Shown: piece by piece, positions 326-18,397 of the stretch | Layout: each line of letters starts with the position of its first letter | Numbering within the stretch: position 1 is the stretch's first letter | Assembly: GCA_002104905.1 (NCBI GenBank) | Contig: MCFE01000310.1 | Coordinates: forward strand, 1-64,000 | Direction of reading: 5' to 3' | Length of the DNA: 64,000 nucleotides | From: Basidiobolus meristosporus CBS 931.73 | Taxonomy: Eukaryota > Fungi > Basidiobolomycota | Position numbers and translations under genes: made by a program | The notes under the pieces: model-generated | Databases searched by the model: none | Told to the model about the DNA's origin: nothing | The model's input: only the letters and a program-made list of their open reading frames with translations

Positions 326-1756
326 TCACAATTCATTCAGTGCACTTTCTGGTCTTCCATGGGTGTACGTGTGGTTCAGAATATTTAAAACGGTTGCCTG
401 GGAATACAATGATGGTTCACCAATGGTATTCGACTAGCTCACTACGTCAGGAACTTACCTCGAATCTGTGGAAAGTCCCGGTTGTTTGCCAACCAATATG
501 AGGCAACAATGTTACTCGATCACAGGAGAGCAGATAAGGGTCCACCATTGGCTCGTTTTCATAGACATCCAGTCCCGCGGCAAAGATCTTGATTTGGGGT
601 TAGAACTGACATCTCTGAGTTGTATGAACTCCACCACTGACCTTGCCTGACTTCAAACCACTGACCAAAGCGGCTTCCTCAATTATCTTTCCTCGCCCAG
701 TGTTGACGATAACCACATTATCCTTCATTTTCTGTAAGGATTTTTCGTTGATTAGATGGCAATTGTCCTTATTGAGGGGAGCGTTGATGCTGAGGATGTC
801 AATGGTCGCAAGGAATTCATCAAGCGGCAAATATGTTGCTTGGTATAATTCCTCCTCTAATGAGAGTTAGTTCAACTATTTGGGTTCGTGATGAGGACAA
901 TTAGCTATCCAACCAGATTTACTCAAAGGCTGACGGTTATGGTAGAATATTTCCACATCAAATCCGAGGGCACGTCTAGCCACCGACTGGCGAGAGGTAC
1001 ATCAGAACCCCAACTTGTATGCTTGTTCGGAGCAACTCACGTACCTTTCCGATCTTTCCCATGCCCAAAATACCTAACTTCTTTCCCTTCATGTCCATTC
1101 CCATCTGGATGCCATCTCTCCATAGGCCTATTGTAAAGTTAAGAAATGACCAGGAGCAGCTCTAACCTTGGACAAGAGTACCTTTCCGCAATAATTGCTC
1201 GGCTTGATACGTTTGCCTACACGCTGAAAGAATCAGGTGAACGGCTATCTCAGCAGTGGAATCGCATGCTCCACCAGGCACATTGGTGACCCAGATTCCT
1301 AAGCCAAAGGATTAGTTCAAGATCCGGATTTATTGTTAACTGGCCATACCTCTGCTTGTGGCTTCTTCCAGATCAACATTATCGTACCCAGCTGCACCAA
1401 TGGCGATCAGCTTTAGGCTGTCAGGCAACAGAGAAAAGATCTCATGGTCGAATCTTTCGATCTATGGTTTGAAGAGGGTCAGATTGAACAACAAGATGCG
1501 TAAACCATCACCATACTATTTCGAATTCTATGAACAGAATGGCGAATAGATCATCGTAGTAGCCTTCTTTGAGATTCTTTATAAACATCTCTCTGTTTGG
1601 TTCGGTATGGAACTGCCGTAGATAATGAGTTAGTAAAGAAATGGAGAAGATCAGCAGTATACTTACTTTGAAATTAAATTCCGATGACAACTCTTCGTAT
1701 AACTCACTGGCATGCTCCAGGGTACCCGAAACGAGAACTGTAGGCTTGATGGTCAT
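326..1756 (-). CDS. D-isomer-specific 2-hydroxyacid dehydrogenase (glyoxylate/hydroxypyruvate/hydroxyphenylpyruvate reductase-like), multi-exon
   Basis: Spliced translation gives MTIKPTVLVSG..., WVTNVPG, Rossmann KLGILGMGKIG, FYHNR, NTGRG (Arg), AAGLDVYENEP (Glu), LLPHIG (His). Stop TGA at 328-326 after GT-AG introns read manually. Confidence 0.9.
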
Positions 1757-2257: not shown

Positions 2258-3932
2258 ATGACTGTTGAAGAACCCACTTCATTGATTGAGGTCAACTCCT
2301 TTGTCGCAAATCTCCCGGTTACAGATGGTTCGTCGCAAAGCAATATCACCGGGTGCCCGAAAACTAATCCTTGCTCTCTAATAGTCAGATCTTTATTCAA
2401 CCAAGCTACAATTCAGTACCAATCCAGTAACCTTGGCCATGGATTCATGAAGTAAGCGGCATCCGTGAAGTGCTGAATACCTTGGTTCTAACGAAGCATA
2501 CAGTTTTCCAGTTCCCGAGTTCATAAAGGAAGCTGCAGCCGGCATCATCCAAGCTGATGAGTTCAACCAGTATGCCCCTCCCCGTGGAGTGCCAAGGCTT
2601 CGCCGGGTACACTTTTCACAACTCCCATTGGGTTTTCACACCAGACCCTAACTGTTTCCTAGGCACTTGCAAAGGATTATTCACCAAAGATTGGACGGGA
2701 GCTTGATCCCGAGAAAGAGATCATCATCACGGCAGGAGCCAACGAAGGCTTACTCAGTATTATGCACTCATTTTGCAAGCCAGGTAATAAGTAACACCTT
2801 GTTGCACTTTCGGGGATTTCCCGGCTAAACAGCTTTGCAGGCGATGAGGTGATCATGTTCGAGCCATATTTCGATGCCTATGTGGTAAGATCTTTGTCGA
2901 CGCCATCCATAAGTGGTTTCTAACAGTCGTCTTTAGTCTCATATCAAAATGCTCAATGCAACCCCTGTCTACTGCCCATTACGCATCAACCCCAGCACCG
3001 ACTGTAGCAAGCCATACTCGTCATCTGATTACTACATTGATATTTCTGAACTGCGTTCCAAAGTATCTCCAAGAACCAAGATGATGATCCTCAATTCACC
3101 GCATAATCCGTTTGGGAAGATATTTAGCAGAGAGGAGCTCCGGGAGATCGGCCAAGTAGCCATTGAGAACAACATTCTCATCGTTAGTGATGAGGTGGTA
3201 AGTGTGGATAAATCCAGCCCATCATCTGGCAACACCGGTTTAATCCGCATATAGTATGACAGGGTCGTTTTCTCGCCCAACCAGCTGGTGCGAGTGAACT
3301 CTATCCCTGAACTGTGGGATCGTACTATAACTGTTTACAGCGGAGGAAAGAGCTTCGGGATCACTGGATGGCGTATCGGGTGGGTGGTTGGACCACAGAA
3401 ATTAATGCGATACGTTACTGGGGCACATGCTGAAATGGTGTACTGTGCCAACGCCCCCCTACAGGTAGGCATTACTGCAGGTCATAACGGGTCTTTCATT
3501 CCACTTATTTCCCACGATTAGGAAGCAGTTGGGCTTGCCTTTGAGCAAGCGGAATCCAACGGATTCTTCACTAAGCAGCTGGCAAAGTACACCCGTCTCT
3601 GCCACAAACTCATGGATGCCTTCGATAGAGTTGGCTTGCCATACGTCATTCCGCAAGGGGGTATTTTCTTGCTAGTGGATACCTCCAAGGTGCGTATCCC
3701 AGCCCACTTGGAGTTCCCTGAAGAAATTGCATCCCGGGGTGAAACGTACAAGATGTGCTACTTCATCACACGAGATATTGGGGTCACCGCTATACCCGCA
3801 ACTGAATTCTATTCCTCTAAGCATGCCTACCTGGCACAGAACATCCTTCGCTTTGCATTCTGCAAGACCGATGACATCATCGATGAGGCAGCCGAACGTC
3901 TCCAAAAACTCACCCAGTACATAATGGACTAG
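2258..3932 (+). CDS. PLP-dependent class I/II aminotransferase, kynurenine/glutamine transaminase (Bna3/KAT-like), multi-exon
   Basis: Exons encode SLFNQ...NLGHGFM, QYAPPRG, ITAGANEG, FEPYFDAY, LNSPHNPFGK, SDEV, the PLP-Lys motif SGGKSFGITGWRIGW, and LRFAFCK. Confidence 0.9.
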
Positions 3933-4293: not shown

Positions 4294-5823
4294 TTAGTTG
4301 GCCATATTGACTTTAGATACATTCTCATGTCGTGGGATAAATTTGGCATCGTAAGGCAATGGACTGAAACTCTTGGTAAAGCGAACAGTCTCGACATCGA
4401 TGATATGCCCTGGTTCGTGGGGTTCGATTCGGAATGCCCACAAAAGTCTAGAGATGACACAGAACAGTTCACGCTCCGCCAAGAAGATTCCTGGGCATCC
4501 ACGGCGACCAATACCAAAGGCGAAATGATCCCGCTTATGGATGTCGCCGATGTGAGCAAGGTTCGCGGCCGACTCCTCAACGCCGAGATAACGATCAGGG
4601 TTGAATTGATGAGGATCCTTGTGTCGCTTAGGATCAAAGTCAATGGTATACGAGTTCAGCAACATGATAGTGTTTTTAGGAATGAAGTAGCCCTTGTAGG
4701 TATCATCATTGGAGGTAGCATGGGCAATTCCTAGGAAGGACTTTGGACGATAACGCATGGTCTCCTTGATGACGGCGCGGAGGTAAGGCATCTTGCTCTC
4801 GTCACTTGGAAGAGGAACACGATCACGACCGACTACTTGGTCCATCTCCTCATGAATTCTCTCCTGAATTCCAGGATGATTGGCCATTAATGCGGTGAAC
4901 CACATAAGCATAATTGATGGACCATCTGAGCCGGCAATCATCATAGCAGCACACAGATTCACGATATCAAGCTCTTCCAAATCGTACTCGCCCTGGTTCT
5001 CCAGGATATGCTTTGCAAAGCAAGGAATTGCCACTCCTTGCTCTATCTCTTCCTTCAACTGATTCAAGAACTTAAGGGCAAGTCCCTCTCTGCGATCGCG
5101 GAGTGCTGTGGCCTTTGCGCGTAGACTGGTAGGAAGCCATCTCAGGATGGGGAATAGATCTAACATTCTGGATGCCTTATCAACGGAAGTGATGCCGAAC
5201 ATCTCGTCGTTAACGTACTTCAATTCCTCAATCACAGGATCGTTGACATCTTTAACGCGATAGCCGAAAGACATGGTCAAGATGGTGTTGAAAGAGAATC
5301 TGACCAGACTAGTGGCAGGGTCAAACGATTTTGCGCCGGATTCACCTTGCTCAAGCAAGCTTTGTACCAAATCCCTAGACTCCTTTTCGATGATTGGCTG
5401 GTATGACTCGACAACATATGGGTGAAGGGTGCTATGGACAAGCTTACGGAGAAGTCTCCAATAGTCACCGTAAGGGGCCATGGTAATGGAGCGACCACCA
5501 CGAGCAATAATCTCGGTAGCAAGATAACCTTGGCTACGGGAATTATAATTACGCCCACGGATAATAAAGAGATCCCTGGCAATGTCAATGTCGTTGACAA
5601 CGACAATCAGCTGAGAACCAACGCGGACGGATATCAAAGGCCCGTATTTTTTGCTCCACTTTGTAAAAGTCTCGTAAGGCAAGTTTCCGACATCCAAGAG
5701 ACTGCCGATGATCGGCCAACCACGGGGCCCTGGGGGAAGAGGGCCAGGATAGCGACGACTATGGTAGATACCAAGGCCAATTAAAATTAGACCTAGTATC
5801 ACGGCGATGGTGTTATACTCCAT
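4294..5823 (-). CDS. Cytochrome P450 (microsomal, clan CYP64/CYP2-like), intronless, 509 aa
   Basis: N-terminal TM anchor, PPGPRGWP hinge, ExxR (ETMR), PDRY, heme motif FGIGRRGCPG. I-helix reads AGSDGPS. Confidence 0.95.
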   Translation of the reverse strand: MEYNTIAVILGLILIGLGIYHSRRYPGPLPPGPRGWPIIGSLLDVGNLPYETFTKWSKKYGPLISVRVGSQLIVVVNDIDIARDLFIIRGRNYNSRSQGYLATEIIARGGRSITMAPYGDYWRLLRKLVHSTLHPYVVESYQPIIEKESRDLVQSLLEQGESGAKSFDPATSLVRFSFNTILTMSFGYRVKDVNDPVIEELKYVNDEMFGITSVDKASRMLDLFPILRWLPTSLRAKATALRDRREGLALKFLNQLKEEIEQGVAIPCFAKHILENQGEYDLEELDIVNLCAAMMIAGSDGPSIMLMWFTALMANHPGIQERIHEEMDQVVGRDRVPLPSDESKMPYLRAVIKETMRYRPKSFLGIAHATSNDDTYKGYFIPKNTIMLLNSYTIDFDPKRHKDPHQFNPDRYLGVEESAANLAHIGDIHKRDHFAFGIGRRGCPGIFLAERELFCVISRLLWAFRIEPHEPGHIIDVETVRFTKSFSPLPYDAKFIPRHENVSKVNMAN

Positions 5824-6103
5824 TGTGTGTGAGGATTGGACTCGTAGATTTGTCTATTTATATAGAAATCTATGGACCGGCCTTCATCTAACCATAAAGC
5901 CCGTATCAACCAGGGCCCCATACAGAAAGTTACACCACCGCTTACTTTTGTCTAACAGGAAATTTCCACCAGTCGGCCACCTCGCTTTGCCTGGAAATAT
6001 GAAACTTCTCGACGACAGCAAATAGGCGGCGTGATTCTTCCGTTTGAGCACCCACATAATTGCTAAACCAGGCAAGGATCGTTCATCACCATATTAGTAT
6101 CAC

Positions 6104-6120
6104 TTACCCATGATGGGTAA
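6104..6120. promoter_or_regulatory. Perfect inverted repeat TTACCCAT-G-ATGGGTAA in the P450/E1 divergent promoter; candidate dimeric TF site
   Basis: 8-bp arms with a 1-bp spacer, read directly from the sequence. Function is inferred. Confidence 0.3.
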
Positions 6121-6655
6121 ATACCCTCGCCGGGAGAAATGTAAGTTACCGCATCGTACATCCTACCCGTCCAGGAGATATGCATGATTGGATTCGGAGA
6201 TGACAAAAATCAGCACAGGAGAACGTTGTTACTCAAATTATTCATATTGGCTCGAACCTGACACTCTGGGGATGGTTCTTACGCCTGTGTCCAGGGACTT
6301 GAGTGTTCACAGGATGATCTTCCCTTTTTTTGGGTTCCGAAGAAGCCGGCAACATTTTAGGTGCCCAAGGTACATGAGTAACTTTCTTTGGAATGCTTTG
6401 ACCCTGTAGAATCGTAAACGGAGTAATACAATGCTATTGCACGACATCCACACCAAGCTATTTTCAACAACGGAGAGATACTTGTACAAATCAGTTATGA
6501 TACGAGGCGCAGATGGGAGATAATTGGTGATTCTTGAAAAGCTCTCACCGAACTCTTCTCATGGAAACTAATAAATAGCGCAAAACGAGTGCATCTCAAC
6601 TCATCGGCAATAGATCTTCCGTTTTCAAGAACTTTAACCTGGCCAGCGCATCAAG

Positions 6656-9636
6656 ATGACTGTATCCTATCCTGTTGAATCCACCTTCTACGGCCCTCGC
6701 AGCCTCAAGAAAGCTCCAGTGTCAGAATGTTGGTACCTTCTCTGGCCTCAAGCTCCGGCCTCCCAAAGCTAACGCATCTTTTCCAACTTAGACTCTGCCG
6801 CTGAAATCGAAAATCGTATTGAGAACAGCAACCTCGTTCGCCTTGTGGAAGCCTATCGCACATTTGGCCATCGTGGAGCTAAGATCGATCCTCTGGGCCT
6901 CTGGATTCGCGAGTGAGTGATCTATAGCACAGTGAATGCATAGTAGAACCTACCAACTAAACTACGTCCTAGCCGCGATGCATCCCTCAATCCAGGATTA
7001 TATGGATTAACCGATATGGATCAAATTTTTAACCTGGAAGGTACATGCACCATCCTCATGAGAAAGTGAAACAGTGACTAACGCTGCTGCCAACCTAGGG
7101 ATCGTCAAGTTGAGCGGACTCAAAAAAGCCACCCTATCTCAGATCATTGATCACTTGGAGAAGACCTACTGCGGCCACCTGGCCTTTGAATTCATGCACA
7201 TTGCGGTAAGATTACCTACGCCAACCAACCACCACCTGGTATTGTACTAATCCTGCTCAGGATGACAATGTTCGCAGGTGGTTTGCCGACAAGGCCGAGA
7301 CCTACCTGGCCACCACCTTCAGCACACAGGAGAAGGAGAAGTTCCTGGAGCTTATCACCAAATCTGAAACGTTTGATCACTTCATGCTTCGTGAGTGCGG
7401 TCGCTTAAAGCAATTCAGTATTGAGGGTACCGAGAGTGCCCTGATCGCCCTCCAACAGGTTTTGGAGCATGCCAGCAAGAATGGAGTTCTGGATGTGGTC
7501 ATGTGCTTAACCCATCGCTGCCGTATGCAAATTATGATGGAGATCCTCGGCGTTCCACAAGCCTATTTATTCAGAAAATTCCAAGGTCTCTCGGAATTCC
7601 CTGATGACATTCCATCCCACATCATTGGTGATCTTGTATACAATGCTCAAGCATCCATCGATCTGAATTTGGGTGGGGAGAACCCATTGCATGTATCTGT
7701 GGTCCCCAATCCATGCCATCTGGAACTTGTCAACCCGGTGGCCCTGGGAAAGGTCCGTGCTAAGCAGGCTGACTACCTTTCTCGGGAAACTGAGGATTAC
7801 AAGGTGGAAGACATGGTAATGAGCGTCCAGATGCATGGAGACGGCGCTTTCACTGGCCAAGGTGTAGTGACTGAGACTTTGGGGCTTACCAACCTCCCTC
7901 ATTTCACCACTGGAGGCAGCATCCATATAGTTTTGAACAACCAGATTGGTGTTTCCACTGATCCCATCAATGGTCGTTCTACCATGTACTCTTCCGACAT
8001 TGGTAAGATGGTGGAAACCCCAGCGATCCATGTGAACGGTGACCACCCCGAATTGGCTGCTATCGCCGGAAGAATTGCTGTCGATTATCGCAAGACGTTC
8101 GGCAAGGACATTATCATTGACATGATTACTTATCGTCGCCGCGGCCACAACGAGACTGAGGATCCATACTACACTCAGCCGGTGATGTACAAGGAGATCG
8201 AAACCCACGACGGTCTTCCAGTTGTGTACTCCAAGCAGTTGCTTGAGGAAGGAGCCGTCGATTCTATGAACTTGATCGAGGAAACCAAGAAAACCCACGA
8301 CAAGTATTTAACTGAATGCTTCCAGAACGCCTCCAAATTCAAGGTGGAGCCATCTCATCTTCTTGGAAAATGGAAGTCCATGGTTATTCCCGAGGAAACC
8401 ATCAGTAAAATGGACACTGGCGTTGATTTGGAAATTCTCCATAAAGTCGGACTCCAATCGGTCACTGTTCCTGAAAGCATAGAGGTCAACGCCAAGGTCA
8501 ATGAGGTGAACATTCAGCCCCGTTTGAAGCAGTTACAGCAAAGAGACAACATTGGTTACCCAGCAGCCGAGGCAATGGCCCTTGGCTCCCTCCTACTTGA
8601 AGGATACGATGTTCGCATTTGTGGACAGGACGTTGCTCGTGGTGTCTGTATTCCCAGACACACCATGATCACTTGCCAAAAGACTAACACCAAATACGCC
8701 CCATTGAACAAGTTGTCTGACAACCAAGGGCGTTTGGAATTGGTAGATAGTCCTCTTGGCGAATTGGCGGTAATGAGTTTCGAATACGGCATGTCCTTGG
8801 AAACCCCCAATCGCTTGAATATTTGGGAGGCTCAATTGGGCGACTTCTACAATGGAGCTCAGGAAGTCATTGATGGCTTCATCTCTGGCGGAGAAGAGAA
8901 GTGGCTCAGACAGTCAGGATTGGTCCTTGTGTTGCCTCACGGATACGATGGTGCCGGTCCAGAGCACACTTCCTGCCGTATTGAAAGATTCCTTCAGCTT
9001 TCCAGCGATCGCTACGACGTGAATAACCCTGACATTCCTAACAATGTCAACTGGCACGTAGTCAACTGCTCGACCCCCGCACAATACTACCACGTTTTGC
9101 GTCGTCAAATGAAGCGTAATTTCCGCAAACCCCTCATTGTTGCCGGCCCTAAGAAATTGATTCGTCTTCCAAATGCTGTCTCAAGCATGGACGACATGGC
9201 CCCCGGTACATCTTTCCAACCAGTAATTGCCGATGGTGAGGCTGATATCAGCTCAGTCCAAAGAGTTGTATTTGTGTCCGGGAAGTTGTACTACGAATTG
9301 CTTGAGCAAAGAGAGAAGAGAGGTCTTATCAACCAAGTTGCGTTGGTAAGAGTTGAGGAATTCTCACCCTTCCCCAAGAATGACCTTGAGGTTGAGATCC
9401 GCAAGTATGCCACTGCTACTGAATTCGTTTGGTGCCAAGAGGAAACCCAGAATGGCGGTGCCTGGAACCATATGGAGCCTAGATTCAATCAAATCTTGCC
9501 CAACGGACATAGAATCAAGTATGTTGGCCGTGGACCTTGTGCTGCTCCCGCTAATGGTATCTACATGATGCACCTTCGCGAACAAAATCAAATCCATGAG
9601 GATGCTTTCACACTTGCCCCCTCAACTTCTGCTTAG
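6656..9636 (+). CDS. DHTKD1: 2-oxoacid dehydrogenase E1 (OGDH/DHTKD1 family), divergent; several 5' introns
   Basis: 5' exons encode NLVRLVEAYRTFGHRGAKIDPLGL and FEFMH. The long exon has NPCHLE, the ThDP motif HGDGAFTGQG...LNNQIG, YRRRGHNE, WEAQLGDF, LPHGYDGAGPEHTSCR and WCQEETQN. Confidence 0.88.
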
Positions 9637-10047: not shown

Positions 10048-10824
10048 CTACAATTTACGCCTTTTCCGTTGCTGGCCCCGCTCGGTAGGCTGATGCTGAT
10101 TCGGTACACGCTTTAATGAATTACCCTGAATAGGTGAGGCAAACCAGTTCCTTATTTTTTGAACAAAGGAGCTGGACTTCCCGCTATCGACAGTGTTTCC
10201 ACAGGAGCTACCTGTACAGAGGAAATTGAAGCAATGGATTTTGCTCTTCTCTTCTTTCGACTGGTAAGCTTCGGGAAAAGTGGTTCTATTTTTCTCTAAA
10301 GGGATATTTTCCTTCTCCGGTGAGGCTTTAAGTAGGGTTCGAGAGGGAGGGCGTCTTGGAGAGTTTTTCGAAGCTCTGCAAGTTGAAGATTTGGGCTGAG
10401 AGGATCTCCTTGAAACTGGTCTAGCACTGGCCTCGTTTTGGTGAAAGTTTGGTAGGAATACGGAGTTATTATGATATGGGAAACACTTCGGTGGCGGTGG
10501 CGCTTGACAGTACCATACGAAATTCGTATCCTTCGATGCTTTACTTTTTTCTTTAATAGGGCGATACGCAGTGGGATTACGATTGGTCTCGCTTTCAAGT
10601 GGCGGGGTAAAAAGGGCTGACGGGTATGGTAATGGAGTATTATGGTCAATGGACTTATTTGGGGATGGTTCGATCGTCTCCTCCTCTTGGAGTTCAGCGG
10701 ACCTTTTCCTAAAAGTATTGAAACTACAAGAGGAATGGCTGGAGACTGAGCCACTCACTGTGCGACCTTTACGAGAGGATTGAGTTGAATATCCAGAGTC
10801 CGAATTGGTAGCGTCCTCATTCAT
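10048..10824 (-). CDS. Hypothetical Ser/Pro/Arg-rich, probably disordered protein (258 aa) with a basic C-terminal NLS-like RKRRKL
   Basis: Single ATG-initiated ORF filling an intergenic gap. No family motif recognised. Confidence 0.55.
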   Translation of the reverse strand: MNEDATNSDSGYSTQSSRKGRTVSGSVSSHSSCSFNTFRKRSAELQEEETIEPSPNKSIDHNTPLPYPSALFTPPLESETNRNPTAYRPIKEKSKASKDTNFVWYCQAPPPPKCFPYHNNSVFLPNFHQNEASARPVSRRSSQPKSSTCRASKNSPRRPPSRTLLKASPEKENIPLEKNRTTFPEAYQSKEEKSKIHCFNFLCTGSSCGNTVDSGKSSSFVQKIRNWFASPIQGNSLKRVPNQHQPTERGQQRKRRKL

Positions 10825-14065: not shown

Positions 14066-14444
14066 TTACAAAGTGTTGACGTTGCCGAGAGATTGGCAAG
14101 ATTGTTGGACACGCTTGATCATGGTCTTCTCAGACTCACGGATGAAGACACGAGGATCGTAGTACTTCTTGTTAGGCTTGTCGGCTCCCTCGGGGTTGCC
14201 AATTTGGCCTTGGAGGTATCCCTTGTTCTTCTCGTAGAAGTTCTTGAGACCTTCCCAGTAAGCCCATTGGGTGTCGGTATCGACGTTCATCTTGACAACA
14301 CCGTGGGAGACAGCGGTCTTGATTTCATCCTCAGTGGAGCCGGATCCTCCGTGGAAGACGAAGTAGACAGGCTTGTCAGACTCGCACTTCAATTGCTCCT
14401 TGACGAAGGCTTGGTGGACACCCAAAAGCTCAGGCTTGAGGACA

Positions 14445-14483
<39 letters not shown>

Positions 14484-15143
14484 GCAGCGGCAATAGTGAA
14501 CATGTCGGTGATGGTGGAGAAGTTGCGGTAGACATCCCAGATATCCTCGGGGGAGGTGAAGAGGGAGTCCTTGTCGACGTTGGAGTTGTCAACACCATCT
14601 TCCTCACCACCGGTGATACCGATCTCCATCTCCAAGAGACAGCCCATGGGGGCCATACGCTTCAAGTAGCTCATGCAGATCTCAATGTTCTCCTCCTTGG
14701 GCTCCTCGGAGAGGATCCAACATGTGGGAAGAGAAGAGGGGCTCGCCGTGTTGCTTGAAGTAAGCCTCATCAGCTTGGATCATACCCTCGAACCAAGGAA
14801 GGAGCTTCTTGGCGCAATGGTCGGAGTGGAGGACAACGGGGATTCCGTATTCCTTGGCAACGGCACGGACGTGGTGGGCACCAGCGATGGCTCCGAGGAT
14901 GCTGGCCTTTTGGCCCTCGTTGGAGATACCCTTACCGGCGTAGTAGGCGGCACCACCGTTGGAGAATTGAACAATGATGGGGCACTTCAAGTCACGAGCA
15001 GCCTCAAGACAGGCGTTGATGGTGCTGGAGGAGGTACAGTTGACAGCGGGGATGGCGAACTTGTTCTCGCGAGCGTAGTTGAAAAGCTTTCTAAGGTTGT
15101 CACCAGTGACAACACCAGCGGGAACGATATCAAGAAGACCCAT
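14066..15143 (-). pseudogene. FBA1: Fructose-bisphosphate aldolase class II, copy A, +1 frameshift (extra G at 14713-14714); pseudogene or assembly error
   Basis: Span is 1078 nt versus 1077 for the intact copy C. Sequence reads gagGatcc where copies B and C read gagatcc. Otherwise near-identical. Confidence 0.8.
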
Positions 15144-15740
15144 ATTTAATTACAAAAGTGAATACTTTGTGAAGAATAAATTTCGCGATTGACACCTCAT
15201 TTATATTAGCGTTCCTCTGTACCGAGTAACAATTGTCAACTTGAGCTGATGCTGAAGATAGTCCTATTCTGGTTGATACCCGATTTATTTGCTGATAACC
15301 TGCATTTGCCTACGCTTCGTCATTAAGATCATCCCATTTGATAGCATTATACCTGGGCCAAATCTCAAACTGTTTTCCCACTTGTCTAGCCTTTGAAAAT
15401 ATATGGAAATTGGCTATTCATGCTGTGTTTATTATAAATAATATCAAGGCGATAGTGGCCATCATCTGGATACTTTGGGATACTTTTTGGGAGAACCCGG
15501 AAACAAGTAGCCAACCTGATCCAATCACTGTACCGTACGCTATAGAAATGCTAAGAAGGAAATTCTTTCTAATAGAAAAAAATATGACCATTACATTGCT
15601 ACGTGGTTGATTCAAGCGTCATACCACGTCGTTCATAATCAGCTATAGTGGTTTGAGCAGGTTTAAAATGTAACAGAAGAAAAGATAGGACATAATAGTC
15701 TTTTATTATTCTAAGTGGTTAAGACTAAACGATTGGAAAT

Positions 15741-16119
15741 TTACAAAGTGTTAACGTTGCCGAGAGATTGGCAAGATTGTTGGACACGCTTGATCATGGT
15801 CTTCTCAGACTCACGGATGAAGACACGAGGATCGTAGTACTTCTTGTTAGGCTTGTCGGCTCCCTCGGGGTTGCCAATTTGGCCTTGGAGGTATCCCTTG
15901 TTCTTCTCGTAGAAGTTCTTGAGACCTTCCCAGTAAGCCCATTGGGTGTCGGTATCGACGTTCATCTTGACAACACCGTGGGAGACGGCGGTCTTGATCT
16001 CATCCTCAGTGGAGCCGGATCCTCCGTGGAAGACGAAGTAGACAGGCTTGTCAGACTCGCACTTCAATTGCTCCTTGACGAAGGCTTGGTGGACACCCAA
16101 AAGCTCAGGCTTGAGGACA

Positions 16120-16158
<39 letters not shown>

Positions 16159-16816
16159 GCAGCGGCAATGGTGAACATGTCGGTGATGGTGGAGAAGTTG
16201 CGGTAGACATCCCAGATATCCTCGGGGGAGGTGAAGAGGGAGTCCTTGTCGACGTTGGAGTTGTCAACACCATCTTCCTCACCACCGGTGATACCGATCT
16301 CCATCTCCAAGAGACAGCCCATGGGGGCCATACGCTTCAAGTAGCTCATACAGATCTCAATGTTCTCCTCCTTGGGCTCCTCGGAGAGATCCAACATGTG
16401 GGAAGAGAAGAGGGGCTCGCCGTGTTGCTTGAAGTAAGCCTCATCAGCTTGGATCATACCCTCGAACCAAGGAAGGAGCTTCTTGGCGCAATGGTCGGAG
16501 TGGAGGACAACGGGGATTCCGTATTCCTTGGCAACGGCACGGACGTGGTGGGCACCAGCGATGGCTCCGAGGATGCTGGCCTTTTGGCCCTCGTTGGAGA
16601 TACCCTTACCGGCGTAGTAGGCGGCACCACCGTTGGAGAATTGAACAATGATGGGGCACTTCAAGTCACGAGCAGCCTCGAGACAGCGTTGATGGTGCTG
16701 GAGGAGGTACAGTTGACTGCGGGGATGGCGAACTTGTTCTCGCGAGCGTAGTTGAAAAGCTTTCTAAGGTTGTCACCAGTGACAACACCAGCAGGAACGA
16801 TATCAAGAAGACCCAT
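15741..16816 (-). pseudogene. FBA1: Fructose-bisphosphate aldolase class II, copy B, -1 frameshift (missing G at 16686); pseudogene or assembly error
   Basis: Span is 1076 nt. Sequence reads gacagcg where copies A and C read gacaggcg. ATG at 16816. Confidence 0.8.
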
Positions 16817-17320
16817 GTTTAATTAATACAACAATAAAATTTGTTGTCTATTTCGACGTCTCTGATCAGTATTTTATACCTGATCGACATTTTTACTGTG
16901 GGTCTAAGGCCTTGTCTAGGCATCGGATTAGATTATAAAGGATAATTCGCGAAATCCAGATTGTCGCATTGTTATTATCTTGGTAATTTAGGATTTGCTC
17001 CTGCCCCAGGTAATAACATATTTGGTAATGAATTATGAATCTCGAATCTTAATGACATGGTGAAGTCGGATTGAGGATTCCGTAGTTGGAGTAATTAGAT
17101 TGATTACACTTTCCTTAACCGCTAACTCGGCAAATACCAATGGATGAATTTATGTTAGAATTGGCGTGTCCCTAGTCCATGGATGGTTCGCCAGAATCCT
17201 GATTTCCATATATGGGCACTGTTTATATTTCATAGACCTTAGCATAGATCTGAGTATTGTTTTTACAGCATTTTATTTGTAGGTTCGTATGAATTTAGTT
17301 GCTATTTCCTGTTAGTAAAT

Positions 17321-17699
17321 TTACAAAGTGTTGACGTTGCCGAGAGATTGGCAAGATTGTTGGACACGCTTGATCATGGTCTTCTCAGACTCACGGATGA
17401 AGACACGAGGATCGTAGTACTTCTTGTTGGGCTTGTCGGCTCCCTCGGGGTTGCCAATTTGGCCTTGGAGGTATCCCTTGTTCTTCTCGTAGAAGTTCTT
17501 GAGACCTTCCCAGTAAGCCCATTGGGTGTCGGTATCGACGTTCATCTTGACAACACCGTGGGAGACGGCGGTCTTGATCTCATCCTCAGTGGAGCCAGAT
17601 CCTCCGTGGAAGACGAAGTAGACAGGCTTGTCAGACTCGCACTTCAATTGCTCCTTGACGAAGGCTTGGTGGACACCCAAAATCTCGGGCTTGAGGACA

Positions 17700-17738
<39 letters not shown>

Positions 17739-18397
17739 GCAGCGGCAATGGTGAACATGTCGGTGATGGTGGAGAAGTTACGGTAGACATCCCAGATATC
17801 CTCGGGGGAGGTGAAGAGGGAGTCCTTGTCGACGTTGGAGTTGTCAACACCATCTTCCTCACCACCGGTGATACCGATCTCCATCTCCAAGAGACAGCCC
17901 ATGGGGGCCATACGCTTCAAGTAGCTCATACAGATCTCAATGTTCTCCTCCTTGGGCTCCTCGGAGAGATCCAACATGTGGGAAGAGAAGAGGGGCTCGC
18001 CGTGTTGCTTGAAGTAAGCCTCATCAGCTTGGATCATACCCTCGAACCAAGGAAGGAGCTTCTTGGCGCAATGGTCGGAGTGGAGGACAACGGGGATTCC
18101 GTATTCCTTGGCAACGGCACGGACGTGGTGGGCACCAGCGATGGCTCCGAGGATGCTGGCCTTTTGGCCCTCGTTGGAGATACCCTTACCGGCGTAGTAG
18201 GCGGCACCACCGTTGGAGAATTGAACAATGATGGGGCACTTCAAGTCACGAGCAGCCTCGAGACAGGCGTTGATGGTGCTGGAGGAGGTACAGTTGACTG
18301 CGGGGATGGCGAACTTGTTCTCGCGAGCGTAGTTGAAAAGCTTTCTAAGGTTGTCACCAGTGACAACACCAGCAGGAACGATATCAAGAAGACCCAT
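17321..18397 (-). CDS. FBA1: Fructose-bisphosphate aldolase class II, copy C, intact, intronless, 358 aa
   Basis: HSDHC, GNVHGVYKPG, FHGGSG, KMNVDTD and NKKYYDPR motifs of the yeast-type class IIA aldolase. Confidence 0.97.

What the first reader, a model, noticed from the sequence alone, without database searches (positions are those of the whole stretch)
7500..8670. OGDH/DHTKD1-type E1 with rewired substrate-binding motifs
Seen: the ThDP/Mg motif (GDG..F.GQG...NN) and NPCHLE/GHNE are kept, but other near-invariant blocks are changed. GDVKYHL (OGDH) / GDVLSHL (DHTKD1) becomes GDLVYNA at 7627-7647 (His to Asn); HRGRLN becomes HRCRMQ; GQDV.RGTFS.RH becomes GQDVARGVCIPRH; EAQFGDF becomes EAQLGDF. 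Established: the His of GDVKYH (E. coli SucA H260) binds the distal carboxylate of 2-oxoglutarate. Inference: the enzyme probably takes a 2-oxo acid without a distal carboxylate (aromatic or aliphatic), a specificity not known for this family. The long uninterrupted ORF argues against decay.
Basis: partly seen in the sequence, partly recalled or inferred. Interest (0 to 1): 0.72.

Follow-up and report, generated by a model that had tools for sequence, protein, structure and literature searches.

The report
Rewired DHTKD1-type E1 enzyme paralogue
A fungal (Basidiobolus) copy of the 2-oxoadipate dehydrogenase E1 enzyme keeps its thiamine-diphosphate catalytic residues, has replaced every residue that normally holds the substrate's far carboxylate, and is under strong purifying selection, so it most likely acts on a different, still unknown 2-oxo acid.

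Summary
Window 7261-9636 (+) is the last exon of a five-exon gene (6656-9636) of Basidiobolus meristosporus. The gene encodes a 914-aa E1 closest to DHTKD1, not OGDH.

- **Active site.** All cofactor and catalytic residues are kept. The five residues that recognise the distal carboxylate in DHTKD1 are all replaced (Y190F, S263Y, H264N, S288C, Y370V). Each is invariant or nearly so in 114 canonical DHTKD1 sequences.
- **Relatives.** The same signature is fixed in five full-length gene models: four B. meristosporus paralogues (one of them tandemly duplicated) and a B. ranarum orthologue. It also occurs, at only 57% identity, in a partial protein from an assembly labelled Borealophlyctis.
- **Not the only copy.** A canonical DHTKD1 exists in the same genome.
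- **Selection.** dN/dS against the B. ranarum orthologue is about 0.03.
- **N-terminus.** The protein lacks the N-terminal presequence extension of canonical copies.
- **Neighbours.** It is head-to-head with a P450, a pairing conserved in B. ranarum. It lies next to a BNA3/kynurenine-type aminotransferase and a D-2-hydroxyacid dehydrogenase.

The most likely reading is a neofunctionalised ThDP E1 acting on an uncharged or hydrophobic 2-oxo acid derived from an amino acid. Substrate, partner and location are untested. The scan found the same subfamily before, on other DNA (s1-199500).

The parts
6656..9636 (+). Whole gene for the DHTKD1-like E1 (914 aa, P0001). Exons: 6656-6728, 6792-6912, 6973-7040, 7099-7205, 7261-9636.
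   Evidence: 100% hit to the B. meristosporus protein P0001. Called gene. Exon-by-exon translations match P0001 and the introns are GT-AG. An in-frame stop lies 7 codons upstream of the ATG (read).
7408..7428 (+). 'Region 1' KQFSIEG (canonical KRYGLEG): Lys188 kept; R189Q, Y190F, G191S.
   Evidence: role of Tyr190 from PMC7340257
7510..7530 (+). THRCRMQ in place of the near-invariant PHRGRLN
   Evidence: 107 of 119 sequences have PHRGRLN; THRCRMQ occurs only in the 5 divergent copies
7627..7647 (+). GDLVYNA in place of GDV(L/I)SH(L/I): S263Y and H264N (the position of E. coli SucA His260), preceded by a 2-residue longer active-site loop
   Evidence: Ser263 and His264 contact the distal carboxyl of the modelled adipoyl and glutaryl phosphonates (PMC7835950)
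7708..7728 (+). NPCHLEL: S288C; His289 and the V-conformation wedge Leu290 are kept
   Evidence: PMC7340257 and PMC7835950
7834..7965 (+). ThDP/Mg2+ motif, HGDGAF...GQG...NNQIGVSTDP: Asp333 and Asn366 kept; Y370V and P373D in 'loop 1'
8134..8163 (+). 'Loop 2' RRRGHNETED: His435 and Asn436 kept; W433R, D439E, E440D
8638..8661 (+). RGVCIPRH in place of RGTFSQRH (T600V, F601C, S602I, Q603P)
   Evidence: 107 of 119 sequences have RGTFSQRH
8746..8790 (+). DSPLGELAVMSFEYG: the cofactor-activating Glu640 is kept; N635D and S639G flank it
   Evidence: role of Glu640 from PMC7340257
8827..8847 (+). EAQLGDF in place of EAQFGDF (F665L). In OGDH, Phe747 and Phe750 of the partner subunit line the substrate pocket. 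That these two are the phenylalanines of this motif is my inference from their spacing.
   Evidence: 112 of 119 have EAQFGDF; PMC12655727
8956..8979 (+). GPEHTSCR: Glu707 and His708 kept; S709T
4294..5823 (-). Intronless, membrane-anchored cytochrome P450 (509 aa), head-to-head with the E1 gene across an 832-bp spacer
   Evidence: Pfam p450. Best PDB matches are CYP73, CYP17 and CYP1 types. The same divergent P450-E1 pair exists in B. ranarum, where the P450 is 91.6% identical.
2258..3932 (+). Class I/II aminotransferase of the BNA3 / kynurenine aminotransferase / glutamine transaminase K type (428 aa, multi-exon)
   Evidence: Exon pieces hit yeast BNA3 (3b46, E=1e-27) and KAT I and KAT III.
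326..1756 (-). D-isomer-specific 2-hydroxyacid dehydrogenase (328 aa), head-to-head with the aminotransferase
   Evidence: An exon piece hits glyoxylate reductase and D-lactate dehydrogenase structures. A homologue about 50% identical sits head-to-head with the 68%-identical P450 on contig L007.

Best explanation
The gene encodes a functional thiamine-diphosphate E1 enzyme of the OGDH/DHTKD1 fold. It descends from a duplicate of the fungal 2-oxoadipate dehydrogenase E1 (DHTKD1), and its substrate pocket has been remodelled.

**Shown**
- The cofactor and catalytic apparatus is intact.
- The residues that recognise the distal carboxylate of 2-oxoadipate or 2-oxoglutarate are all replaced by less polar ones or ones that cannot carry a charge.
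- The new signature is conserved under strong purifying selection across several paralogues and two or three species.

**Inferred**
- The enzyme still performs ThDP-dependent decarboxylation of a 2-oxo acid, but one whose side chain is uncharged and probably hydrophobic (aromatic, thioether or aliphatic).
- A plausible source of that 2-oxo acid is the neighbouring BNA3/kynurenine-type aminotransferase.
- The acyl or aldehyde product would then feed the divergently transcribed P450.

**Open**
- The enzyme may hand the acyl group to a lipoyl-E2.
- Alternatively, because it lacks the N-terminal presequence extension, it may work alone in the cytosol as a decarboxylase or carboligase.
For: - **Family.** Pfam E1_dh, Transket_pyr and OxoGdeHyase_C. 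Best solved relative is human DHTKD1, at 758 bits against 583 for OGDH. The tree places it inside fungal DHTKD1 on a long stem of 1.05-1.31 substitutions per site, with short inner branches.
- **Active site.** Lys188, His289, Leu290, Asp333, Asn366, His435, Glu640 and His708 are kept in 5 of 5 copies. Y190F, S263Y, H264N, S288C and Y370V are replaced in 5 of 5 copies. Four of these five are invariant in 113-114 of 114 canonical sequences; Tyr370 is Tyr in 107 and Phe in 7. Residue roles come from PMC7340257 and PMC7835950.
- **Engineering precedent.** The title of Shim et al. [quoted passage not shown]
- **Pattern of change.** 49 of 277 highly conserved columns are replaced. They are enriched in the four literature-defined active-site loops (odds ratio 2.7, p=0.024). 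Most pocket changes go toward hydrophobic residues (T600V, S602I, Y370V, F665L, R189Q).
- **Selection.** dN=0.08 with saturated dS against the B. ranarum orthologue. All copies are intact.
- **Deep conservation.** The signature is also kept at 57% identity in P0241.
- **Canonical copy.** Canonical DHTKD1 P0006 is in the same genome, and its first intron is at the same position (my reading of the exon ends).
- **N-terminus.** 13 residues precede the conserved YG motif, against a median of 40 in canonical proteins.
- **Context.** 2-hydroxyacid dehydrogenase, KAT-type aminotransferase, P450 and E1 lie within 9.3 kb as two head-to-head pairs. The P450-E1 pair is conserved in B. ranarum. Homologues of the P450, the 2-hydroxyacid dehydrogenase and the variant E1 co-occur in a second, distant assembly.
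Against: - No biochemical or expression data exist; no RNA run was listed.
- Lys188, His289 (the E. coli His298 position) and His708, which also approach the substrate, are kept.
- Three changes (Y190F, S263Y, and Glu at 707) are simply the OGDH states, so a shorter polar substrate is not excluded.
- The other paralogues sit in unrelated neighbourhoods. Apart from the conserved P450 pairing, the cluster context may therefore be coincidental.
- The N-terminal YG.R segment, the counterpart of the human E1a region 24-47 that is the candidate site for binding E2o, is retained. That argues for continued E2 dependence and hence against a cytosolic stand-alone role.
- Some copies have Ser/Arg-rich N-termini that could still target mitochondria.
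- The AlphaFold model was poor in exactly the active-site loops, so pocket geometry was not assessed.
Confidence: 0.6

Rival explanations
1. It is still a 2-oxoadipate or 2-oxoglutarate dehydrogenase E1 isozyme. The substitutions retune affinity, regulation or chain-length preference for a dicarboxylic or otherwise polar C5-C7 2-oxo acid. One candidate is 2-oxoglutaramate, the product of glutamine transaminase K-type enzymes.
For: - It passes NCBIfam's equivalog cut-off for OGDH E1 (927 bits against 764).
- Lys188, His289, His435, Asn436 and His708 are retained.
- Y190F, S263Y and Glu707 are the OGDH states.
- Asn at 264 can still hydrogen-bond.
- The neighbouring aminotransferase is of the KAT / glutamine transaminase K type.
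Against: - All five residues assigned to the distal carboxyl are replaced, four of them invariant in 113-114 of 114 canonical proteins and Tyr370 nearly so.
- The other pocket changes are toward hydrophobic residues (T600V, S602I, Y370V, F665L).
- The genome already has a canonical DHTKD1.
- The long stem branch followed by conservation is the pattern of a functional shift.
Confidence: 0.22
2. It is a catalytically dead or non-enzymatic derivative (a pseudoenzyme, scaffold or regulator), or a decaying duplicate.
For: - 18% of highly conserved columns are replaced.
- The family is multi-copy.
- No expression evidence is available.
Against: - Every cofactor-binding and catalytic residue tested is kept.
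- dN/dS is about 0.03, with intact reading frames in six copies and two species.
- The new signature is conserved at 57% identity.
Confidence: 0.06
3. It is a self-resistance copy: an inhibitor-insensitive version of the DHTKD1/OGDH target encoded beside the genes that make an inhibitor.
For: - The genus is rich in secondary-metabolite genes (PMC7466969, listed).
- A housekeeping-type enzyme is duplicated next to tailoring-type genes (P450, aminotransferase, reductase).
Against: - A resistance copy must keep the native substrate contacts; here all are replaced.
- It lacks the presequence extension needed to replace the mitochondrial enzyme.
- No core biosynthetic gene (PKS, NRPS or terpene synthase) was seen among the ORFs of 150 aa or more in the window.
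- The other paralogues are not in such contexts.
Confidence: 0.04

Closest known systems
Human DHTKD1 (2-oxoadipate dehydrogenase E1a; PDB 6u3j, 6sy1)
   Same: - Same three-domain fold.
- It is the best sequence match (758 bits over 775 residues).
- Same ThDP/Mg2+ ligands, Leu290 wedge, Glu640, His435 and His708.
- The window protein falls within the DHTKD1 branch of the family.
   Different: - Y190F, S263Y, H264N, S288C and Y370V.
- Changes in RGTFSQRH, EAQFGDF and PHRGRLN.
- An active-site loop 2 residues longer.
- No N-terminal presequence extension.
Canonical DHTKD1 of the same genome (P0006, 973 aa)
   Same: - Same genome.
- 53% identical.
- Shared position of the first intron (my reading of the exon ends).
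- Same domain set.
   Different: P0006 keeps every canonical motif and has a 58-residue basic N-terminal extension. The window protein has neither.
Engineered E. coli SucA (E1o) His260/His298 variants (Shim et al. 2011, Biochemistry 50:7705; cited in PMC8146983)
   Same: The histidine of GDVKYH is replaced. [quoted passage not shown] It is the laboratory counterpart of the natural H264N change seen here.
   Different: Those are single laboratory substitutions in a bacterial 2-oxoglutarate enzyme. Here a whole set of pocket residues changed naturally, and the His298 equivalent is retained. I could not read the paper itself.
Mycobacterial KGD / 2-oxoglutarate decarboxylase (PDB 2xta etc.)
   Same: It is an OGDH-family E1. 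That is a precedent for E2-independent chemistry in this fold. It matches at 540 bits.
   Different: It still uses 2-oxoglutarate and keeps the histidine triad. It is bacterial and allosterically regulated.
Variant E1 fragment P0241 (assembly labelled Borealophlyctis nickersoniae)
   Same: It carries the same rewired signature at every motif and groups with the Basidiobolus clade with SH-aLRT 100. The same assembly has homologues of the P450 and the 2-hydroxyacid dehydrogenase side by side.
   Different: It is only 57% identical, partial (582 aa), on a 2.2-kb contig and on a very long branch. Whether it truly belongs to the chytrid, came by transfer or is a contaminant is unresolved.

Membership tests
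OGDH/DHTKD1-type homodimeric E1 (ThDP-dependent 2-oxo acid dehydrogenase E1, SucA family) | Domain architecture E1_dh + Transket_pyr + OxoGdeHyase_C | tested here: met
   Pfam E-values of 4e-36, 4e-35 and 3e-48. NCBIfam OGDH E1 equivalog 927 bits against a cut-off of 764.
OGDH/DHTKD1-type homodimeric E1 (ThDP-dependent 2-oxo acid dehydrogenase E1, SucA family) | ThDP/Mg2+ binding and catalytic residues (Asp333, Asn366, Leu290, Glu640, His435, His708; human DHTKD1 numbering) | tested here: met
   All are identical in the five divergent copies; roles from PMC7340257.
OGDH/DHTKD1-type homodimeric E1 (ThDP-dependent 2-oxo acid dehydrogenase E1, SucA family) | Assembly with a lipoylated E2 and reductive acylation of it | not testable with these tools
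   Conservation of the E2-contact segments known from HDX was inconclusive. No E2 sequence was available by reference.
DHTKD1 (2-oxoadipate dehydrogenase E1a) functional orthologues | Phylogenetic placement within the DHTKD1 branch | tested here: met
   It lies inside or at the base of fungal DHTKD1 with a holozoan DHTKD1 outgroup. Its DHTKD1 score exceeds its OGDH score.
DHTKD1 (2-oxoadipate dehydrogenase E1a) functional orthologues | 2-oxoadipate pocket: Tyr190, Ser263, Tyr370 and Asp/Glu707 | tested here: not met
   The states here are Phe, Tyr, Val and Glu. Three of the four are changed in all five copies.
DHTKD1 (2-oxoadipate dehydrogenase E1a) functional orthologues | Distal-carboxyl contacts His264 and Ser288 (E. 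coli His260 position) | tested here: not met
   Asn and Cys in all five copies and in P0241; His and Ser in 114 of 114 canonical sequences.
DHTKD1 (2-oxoadipate dehydrogenase E1a) functional orthologues | N-terminal mitochondrial presequence | tested here: not met
   13 residues precede the YG motif, against a median of 40. Acidic residues lie in the first 10, and an in-frame stop lies 7 codons upstream of the ATG. No targeting predictor was available, so location itself is inferred.
OGDH (2-oxoglutarate dehydrogenase E1o) | Histidine of GDVKYH plus Phe/Tyr/Phe pocket | tested here: not met
   Phe190 and Tyr263 match the OGDH states, but His is replaced by Asn and Phe370 by Val. The overall score to OGDH is lower than to DHTKD1.
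Fungal metabolic gene cluster (co-localised pathway genes) | Conserved co-localisation of the member genes across species | tested here: inconclusive
   The P450-E1 pair is conserved in B. ranarum, but that contig ends 296 bp beyond the P450. The P450 and 2-hydroxyacid dehydrogenase are adjacent on L007 in another assembly. The other E1 paralogues lack these neighbours. Co-expression was not testable.

The most novel reading that the evidence does not exclude
This is the first natural OGDH-family E1 that has abandoned dicarboxylic substrates. It would be a presequence-less, probably cytosolic and E2-independent ThDP decarboxylase or carboligase acting on an aromatic or other uncharged amino-acid-derived 2-oxo acid. 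It would work as part of a compact four-gene module of KAT-type aminotransferase, D-2-hydroxyacid dehydrogenase, P450 and E1. Three of those components (the variant E1, the P450 and the dehydrogenase) recur in a second, distantly related fungal assembly; an aminotransferase was not looked for there.
Probability: 0.25. Interest if true: 0.8.

Novelty: new variant of a known kind. Interest (0 to 1): 0.66.

Why it matters
As far as I know, all characterised members of the OGDH/SucA/DHTKD1 E1 family act on dicarboxylic 2-oxo acids of five to seven carbons. A naturally evolved, selectively maintained branch that has lost the whole carboxylate-recognition set would have several consequences.
- It would extend the substrate range of this fold.
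- It would show in nature what the E. coli His260/His298 engineering showed in the laboratory.
- It would supply a ready-made scaffold for ThDP carboligation or acyl-CoA formation from non-dicarboxylic keto acids.
- It is a caution for annotation: profile models call the protein '2-oxoglutarate dehydrogenase E1' well above their curated cut-offs.
- Its association with a P450, an aminotransferase and a reductase hints at an undescribed amino-acid-derived pathway in early-diverging fungi, whose specialised metabolism is barely explored.

Tried and rejected
- **Expression and transcript 5' end.** No RNA sequencing run was listed for the gene.
- **Structure model.** AlphaFold2 on the 16-sequence alignment gave mean pLDDT 65, with every active-site loop below 50. 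This is expected for a monomer without cofactor. It gave no information on pocket geometry, so no fold search was run.
- **E2 dependence.** I compared conservation of the HDX-defined E2-contact segments. These segments are poorly conserved even among canonical proteins, so the result was inconclusive.
- **P450 identity.** Homologues carry only generic names. The nearest relatives are 36-38% identical agaricomycete P450s, apart from one 68% hit, so no pathway could be inferred.
- **Shared neighbours among paralogues.** None of the other loci (L002-L004) contains the P450, the aminotransferase or the dehydrogenase.
- **Contamination test for the Borealophlyctis contigs.** GC and GC3 differ modestly from the canonical chytrid gene, and so does intron density. 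This is not decisive.
- **Horizontal transfer from bacteria.** Rejected, because the clade nests within fungal DHTKD1. I also read a shared first-intron position with the canonical copy.
- **Exhaustive representative search.** Not run. The word searches already resolve close relatives, with a score gap from 1280 to 940 bits, and a motif-region search was more targeted.
- **Joined protein model.** Searches used the terminal exon by reference or the database protein P0001.
- **Shim et al. 2011.** I could not open PMC3190642, so only its title is cited.
Full report
**What is there**

The window comes from Basidiobolus meristosporus CBS 931.73; the predicted protein matches P0001 at 100%. The exons are 6656-6728, 6792-6912, 6973-7040, 7099-7205 and 7261-9636. 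All introns are GT-AG, and each exon translation is found in P0001.

The protein has the three Pfam domains of OGDH-type E1 enzymes. Its best solved relative is human DHTKD1, the 2-oxoadipate dehydrogenase E1, at 758 bits. That is well ahead of human OGDH (583 bits) and E. coli SucA (567 bits).

**Check of the observation**

EAQLGDF (8827-8847) lies just beyond the given end.

I aligned 119 DHTKD1-type proteins returned by the homology search. GDLVYN(A/S), THRCRMQ, NPCHLEL, RGV(C/F)I(P/A)RH and EAQ(L/I)GDF occur only in five Basidiobolus proteins. The other 114 carry GDV.SH, PHRGRLN, NPSHLE, RGTFS.RH and EAQFGDF almost without exception.

**Which residues changed and which did not**

I used the residue roles given for human DHTKD1:
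- ThDP/Mg2+ ligands Asp333 and Asn366
- the Leu290 wedge
- the activating Glu640
- His435 and His708 for acyl transfer
- pocket residues Tyr190, Ser263, Tyr370 and Asp707 (PMC7340257)
- modelled contacts of the distal carboxyl with Ser263, His264 and Ser288 (PMC7835950)
- docking contacts Lys188, Tyr190, His435, Asn436 and His708 (bioRxiv 10.1101/2020.01.20.913012)

The split is clean. Lys188, His289, Leu290, Asp333, Asn366, His435, Glu640 and His708 are identical in all five divergent copies. Tyr190, Ser263, His264, Ser288 and Tyr370 are replaced in all five, by Phe, Tyr, Asn, Cys and Val. Four of these five are invariant in 113-114 of 114 canonical sequences; Tyr370 is Tyr in 107 and Phe in 7.

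In total, 49 of 277 columns that are at least 90% conserved in canonical DHTKD1 are replaced in every divergent copy. Of these, 34 are fixed to a single new residue. They are enriched in the four active-site loops defined in the literature (10 of 30 against 39 of 247; odds ratio 2.7, p=0.024). A wider set of segments gave a stronger result (p=4e-6), but I chose that set partly after seeing the data.

Other pocket-side changes also remove polarity or bulk: T600V, S602I, F665L in EAQFGDF, and R189Q. In OGDH, Phe747 and Phe750 of the partner subunit line the pocket (PMC12655727). I infer from their spacing that these are the two phenylalanines of EAQFGDF.

The engineering precedent is Shim et al. 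2011. [quoted passage not shown] I could not open the paper itself.

**Not the lineage's ordinary DHTKD1, and not decaying**

The same genome holds a canonical DHTKD1 (P0006, 53% identical) with all standard motifs and a 58-residue basic N-terminal extension.

The divergent form exists in several B. meristosporus loci:
- the window copy
- P0003
- a tandem pair of P0004
- P0005
- a fragmentary gene model, P0031

There is also a B. ranarum orthologue, P0002, at 86-88% identity.

In maximum-likelihood trees these proteins form one clade (SH-aLRT 100). The clade sits on a very long stem (1.05-1.31 substitutions per site) with short inner branches, inside or at the base of fungal DHTKD1. Its exact attachment is unresolved and may be affected by long-branch attraction.

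From the exon ends, I read the first intron as lying at the same position in the window gene and in P0006. That fits a DNA-level duplication.

The terminal exon is intact in all six copies. Against the B. ranarum orthologue, dN is 0.08 with saturated synonymous sites, so dN/dS is about 0.03. The recent tandem pair gives 0.09. Relaxed selection is excluded.

**A relative outside Basidiobolus**

A word search restricted to residues 165-285, the most rewired part, returned one further protein. P0241 is 582 aa, partial, and comes from the assembly labelled Borealophlyctis nickersoniae. It carries the same signature at every motif: KQFSIEG, THRTRMQ, GDLLYNA, NPCHLE, NNQINVSTDP, RGVCIPRH, DSPLGELAVMSFEYG, EGQLGDF and GPEHTSCR. 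It is only 57% identical overall, yet it joins the Basidiobolus clade with SH-aLRT 100. The same assembly also has a canonical DHTKD1, P0027.

The new active-site signature is therefore conserved over a deep divergence, which is strong evidence that it is functional. It also means that the earlier scan note calling the subfamily genus-restricted (s1-199500) needs softening. Whether the small contig is genuinely chytrid, a transfer or a contaminant could not be settled by GC3 or intron density.

**Surroundings**

The window begins at the start of the contig. Its first 9.6 kb hold four genes in two head-to-head pairs:
- a D-isomer 2-hydroxyacid dehydrogenase (326-1756, minus strand)
- a class I/II aminotransferase (2258-3932, plus strand) whose exons match yeast BNA3 and the kynurenine aminotransferase / glutamine transaminase K structures
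- an intronless, membrane-anchored P450 (4294-5823, minus strand)
- the E1 gene (6656-9636, plus strand)

The divergent P450-E1 pair is conserved in B. ranarum, where the P450 is 91.6% identical. That contig ends just beyond the P450.

The P450's only close relative elsewhere is P0122, at 68% identity; the next best hit is 38%. P0122 is in the same Borealophlyctis-labelled assembly. There it sits head-to-head with a 2-hydroxyacid dehydrogenase about 50% identical to the window's. So three of the four genes co-occur in two distant assemblies, which favours a functional module.

Against this, the other E1 paralogues have unrelated neighbours, and co-expression could not be tested.

**N-terminus**

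Four of the five divergent proteins start 13 residues before the conserved YG motif. Canonical proteins have a median 40-residue extension there, basic and free of acidic residues. In the window gene an in-frame stop lies 7 codons upstream of the ATG.

Absence of a presequence extension is therefore observed. Cytosolic location is only inferred. Some copies have Ser/Arg-rich starts, and the segment that is the candidate site for binding E2 in human E1a (PMC8146983) is retained.

**Interpretation**

Best reading (confidence about 0.6): this is a neofunctionalised ThDP E1 that decarboxylates an uncharged, probably hydrophobic 2-oxo acid. That acid is plausibly produced by the neighbouring aminotransferase, and the product would pass to the P450.

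Rivals:
- It is still a dicarboxylate or polar-substrate isozyme, possibly acting on 2-oxoglutaramate (about 0.22). This is supported by the retained Lys188, His289 and His708 and by three changes being OGDH states.
- It is a pseudoenzyme or decaying copy (about 0.06).
- It is a self-resistance copy (about 0.04).

**Comparison with known families**

By fold, cofactor site and phylogeny it is a member of the OGDH/DHTKD1 E1 family, and NCBIfam scores it above the OGDH E1 equivalog cut-off. However, it fails the tested features that define a 2-oxoadipate or 2-oxoglutarate enzyme. I found no paper linking Basidiobolus and DHTKD1. I rate it a new variant of a known kind.

The scan had already met this subfamily on other DNA of the same genome (s1-199500).
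- the orthologue and the dN/dS estimate
- the residue-by-residue split between kept and replaced positions
- the missing presequence extension
- the conserved P450 pairing and four-gene neighbourhood
- the distant relative that shares the signature

Noticed in passing
L007:285-2976 (assembly labelled Borealophlyctis nickersoniae, 3-kb contig) compared with window 326-1756 and 4294-5823: A P450 68% identical to the window's sits head-to-head with a 2-hydroxyacid dehydrogenase about 50% identical to the window's. The next best P450 hit anywhere is only 38%. This patchy, linked distribution between a chytrid-labelled assembly and Basidiobolus suggests co-inheritance with loss, transfer of a module, or contamination.
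   Followed up: partly
window 14066-18397 (- strand): Three tandem genes for class II fructose-bisphosphate aldolase (PF01116), of 345, 338 and 358 aa.
   Followed up: no
L003:3332-6309 and L003:10001-12978: The P0004 paralogue is a recent tandem duplicate. The two copies differ by dN 0.003 and dS 0.037, and an F-box gene follows each copy.
   Followed up: partly
window 5824-6655 compared with L005:1827-2682: The P450-E1 intergenic spacer has largely diverged between B. meristosporus and B. ranarum. It keeps short identical blocks: TTTATATA near 5857, AATATGAAACTTC near 5996, GTTACTCAAA near 6227, TTCTCATG near 6556, and CACATCAAG just before the E1 ATG. These are candidate shared regulatory elements.
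   Followed up: no
window 10048-10824 (- strand): A Ser/Pro-rich 258-aa ORF without Pfam hits lies just downstream of the E1 gene. A 255-aa gene without Pfam hits occupies the same position in B. ranarum.
   Followed up: no
P0031 (B. meristosporus, 611 aa): A further member of the divergent clade is annotated with most of its middle part missing. This is either a faulty gene model or a truncated copy.
   Followed up: no
B. ranarum assembly: Only one divergent copy (P0002) was returned for B. ranarum, although the tree implies that the P0003-P0005 lineage split before the two species diverged. Those copies are either lost or missing from the fragmented assembly.
   Followed up: no
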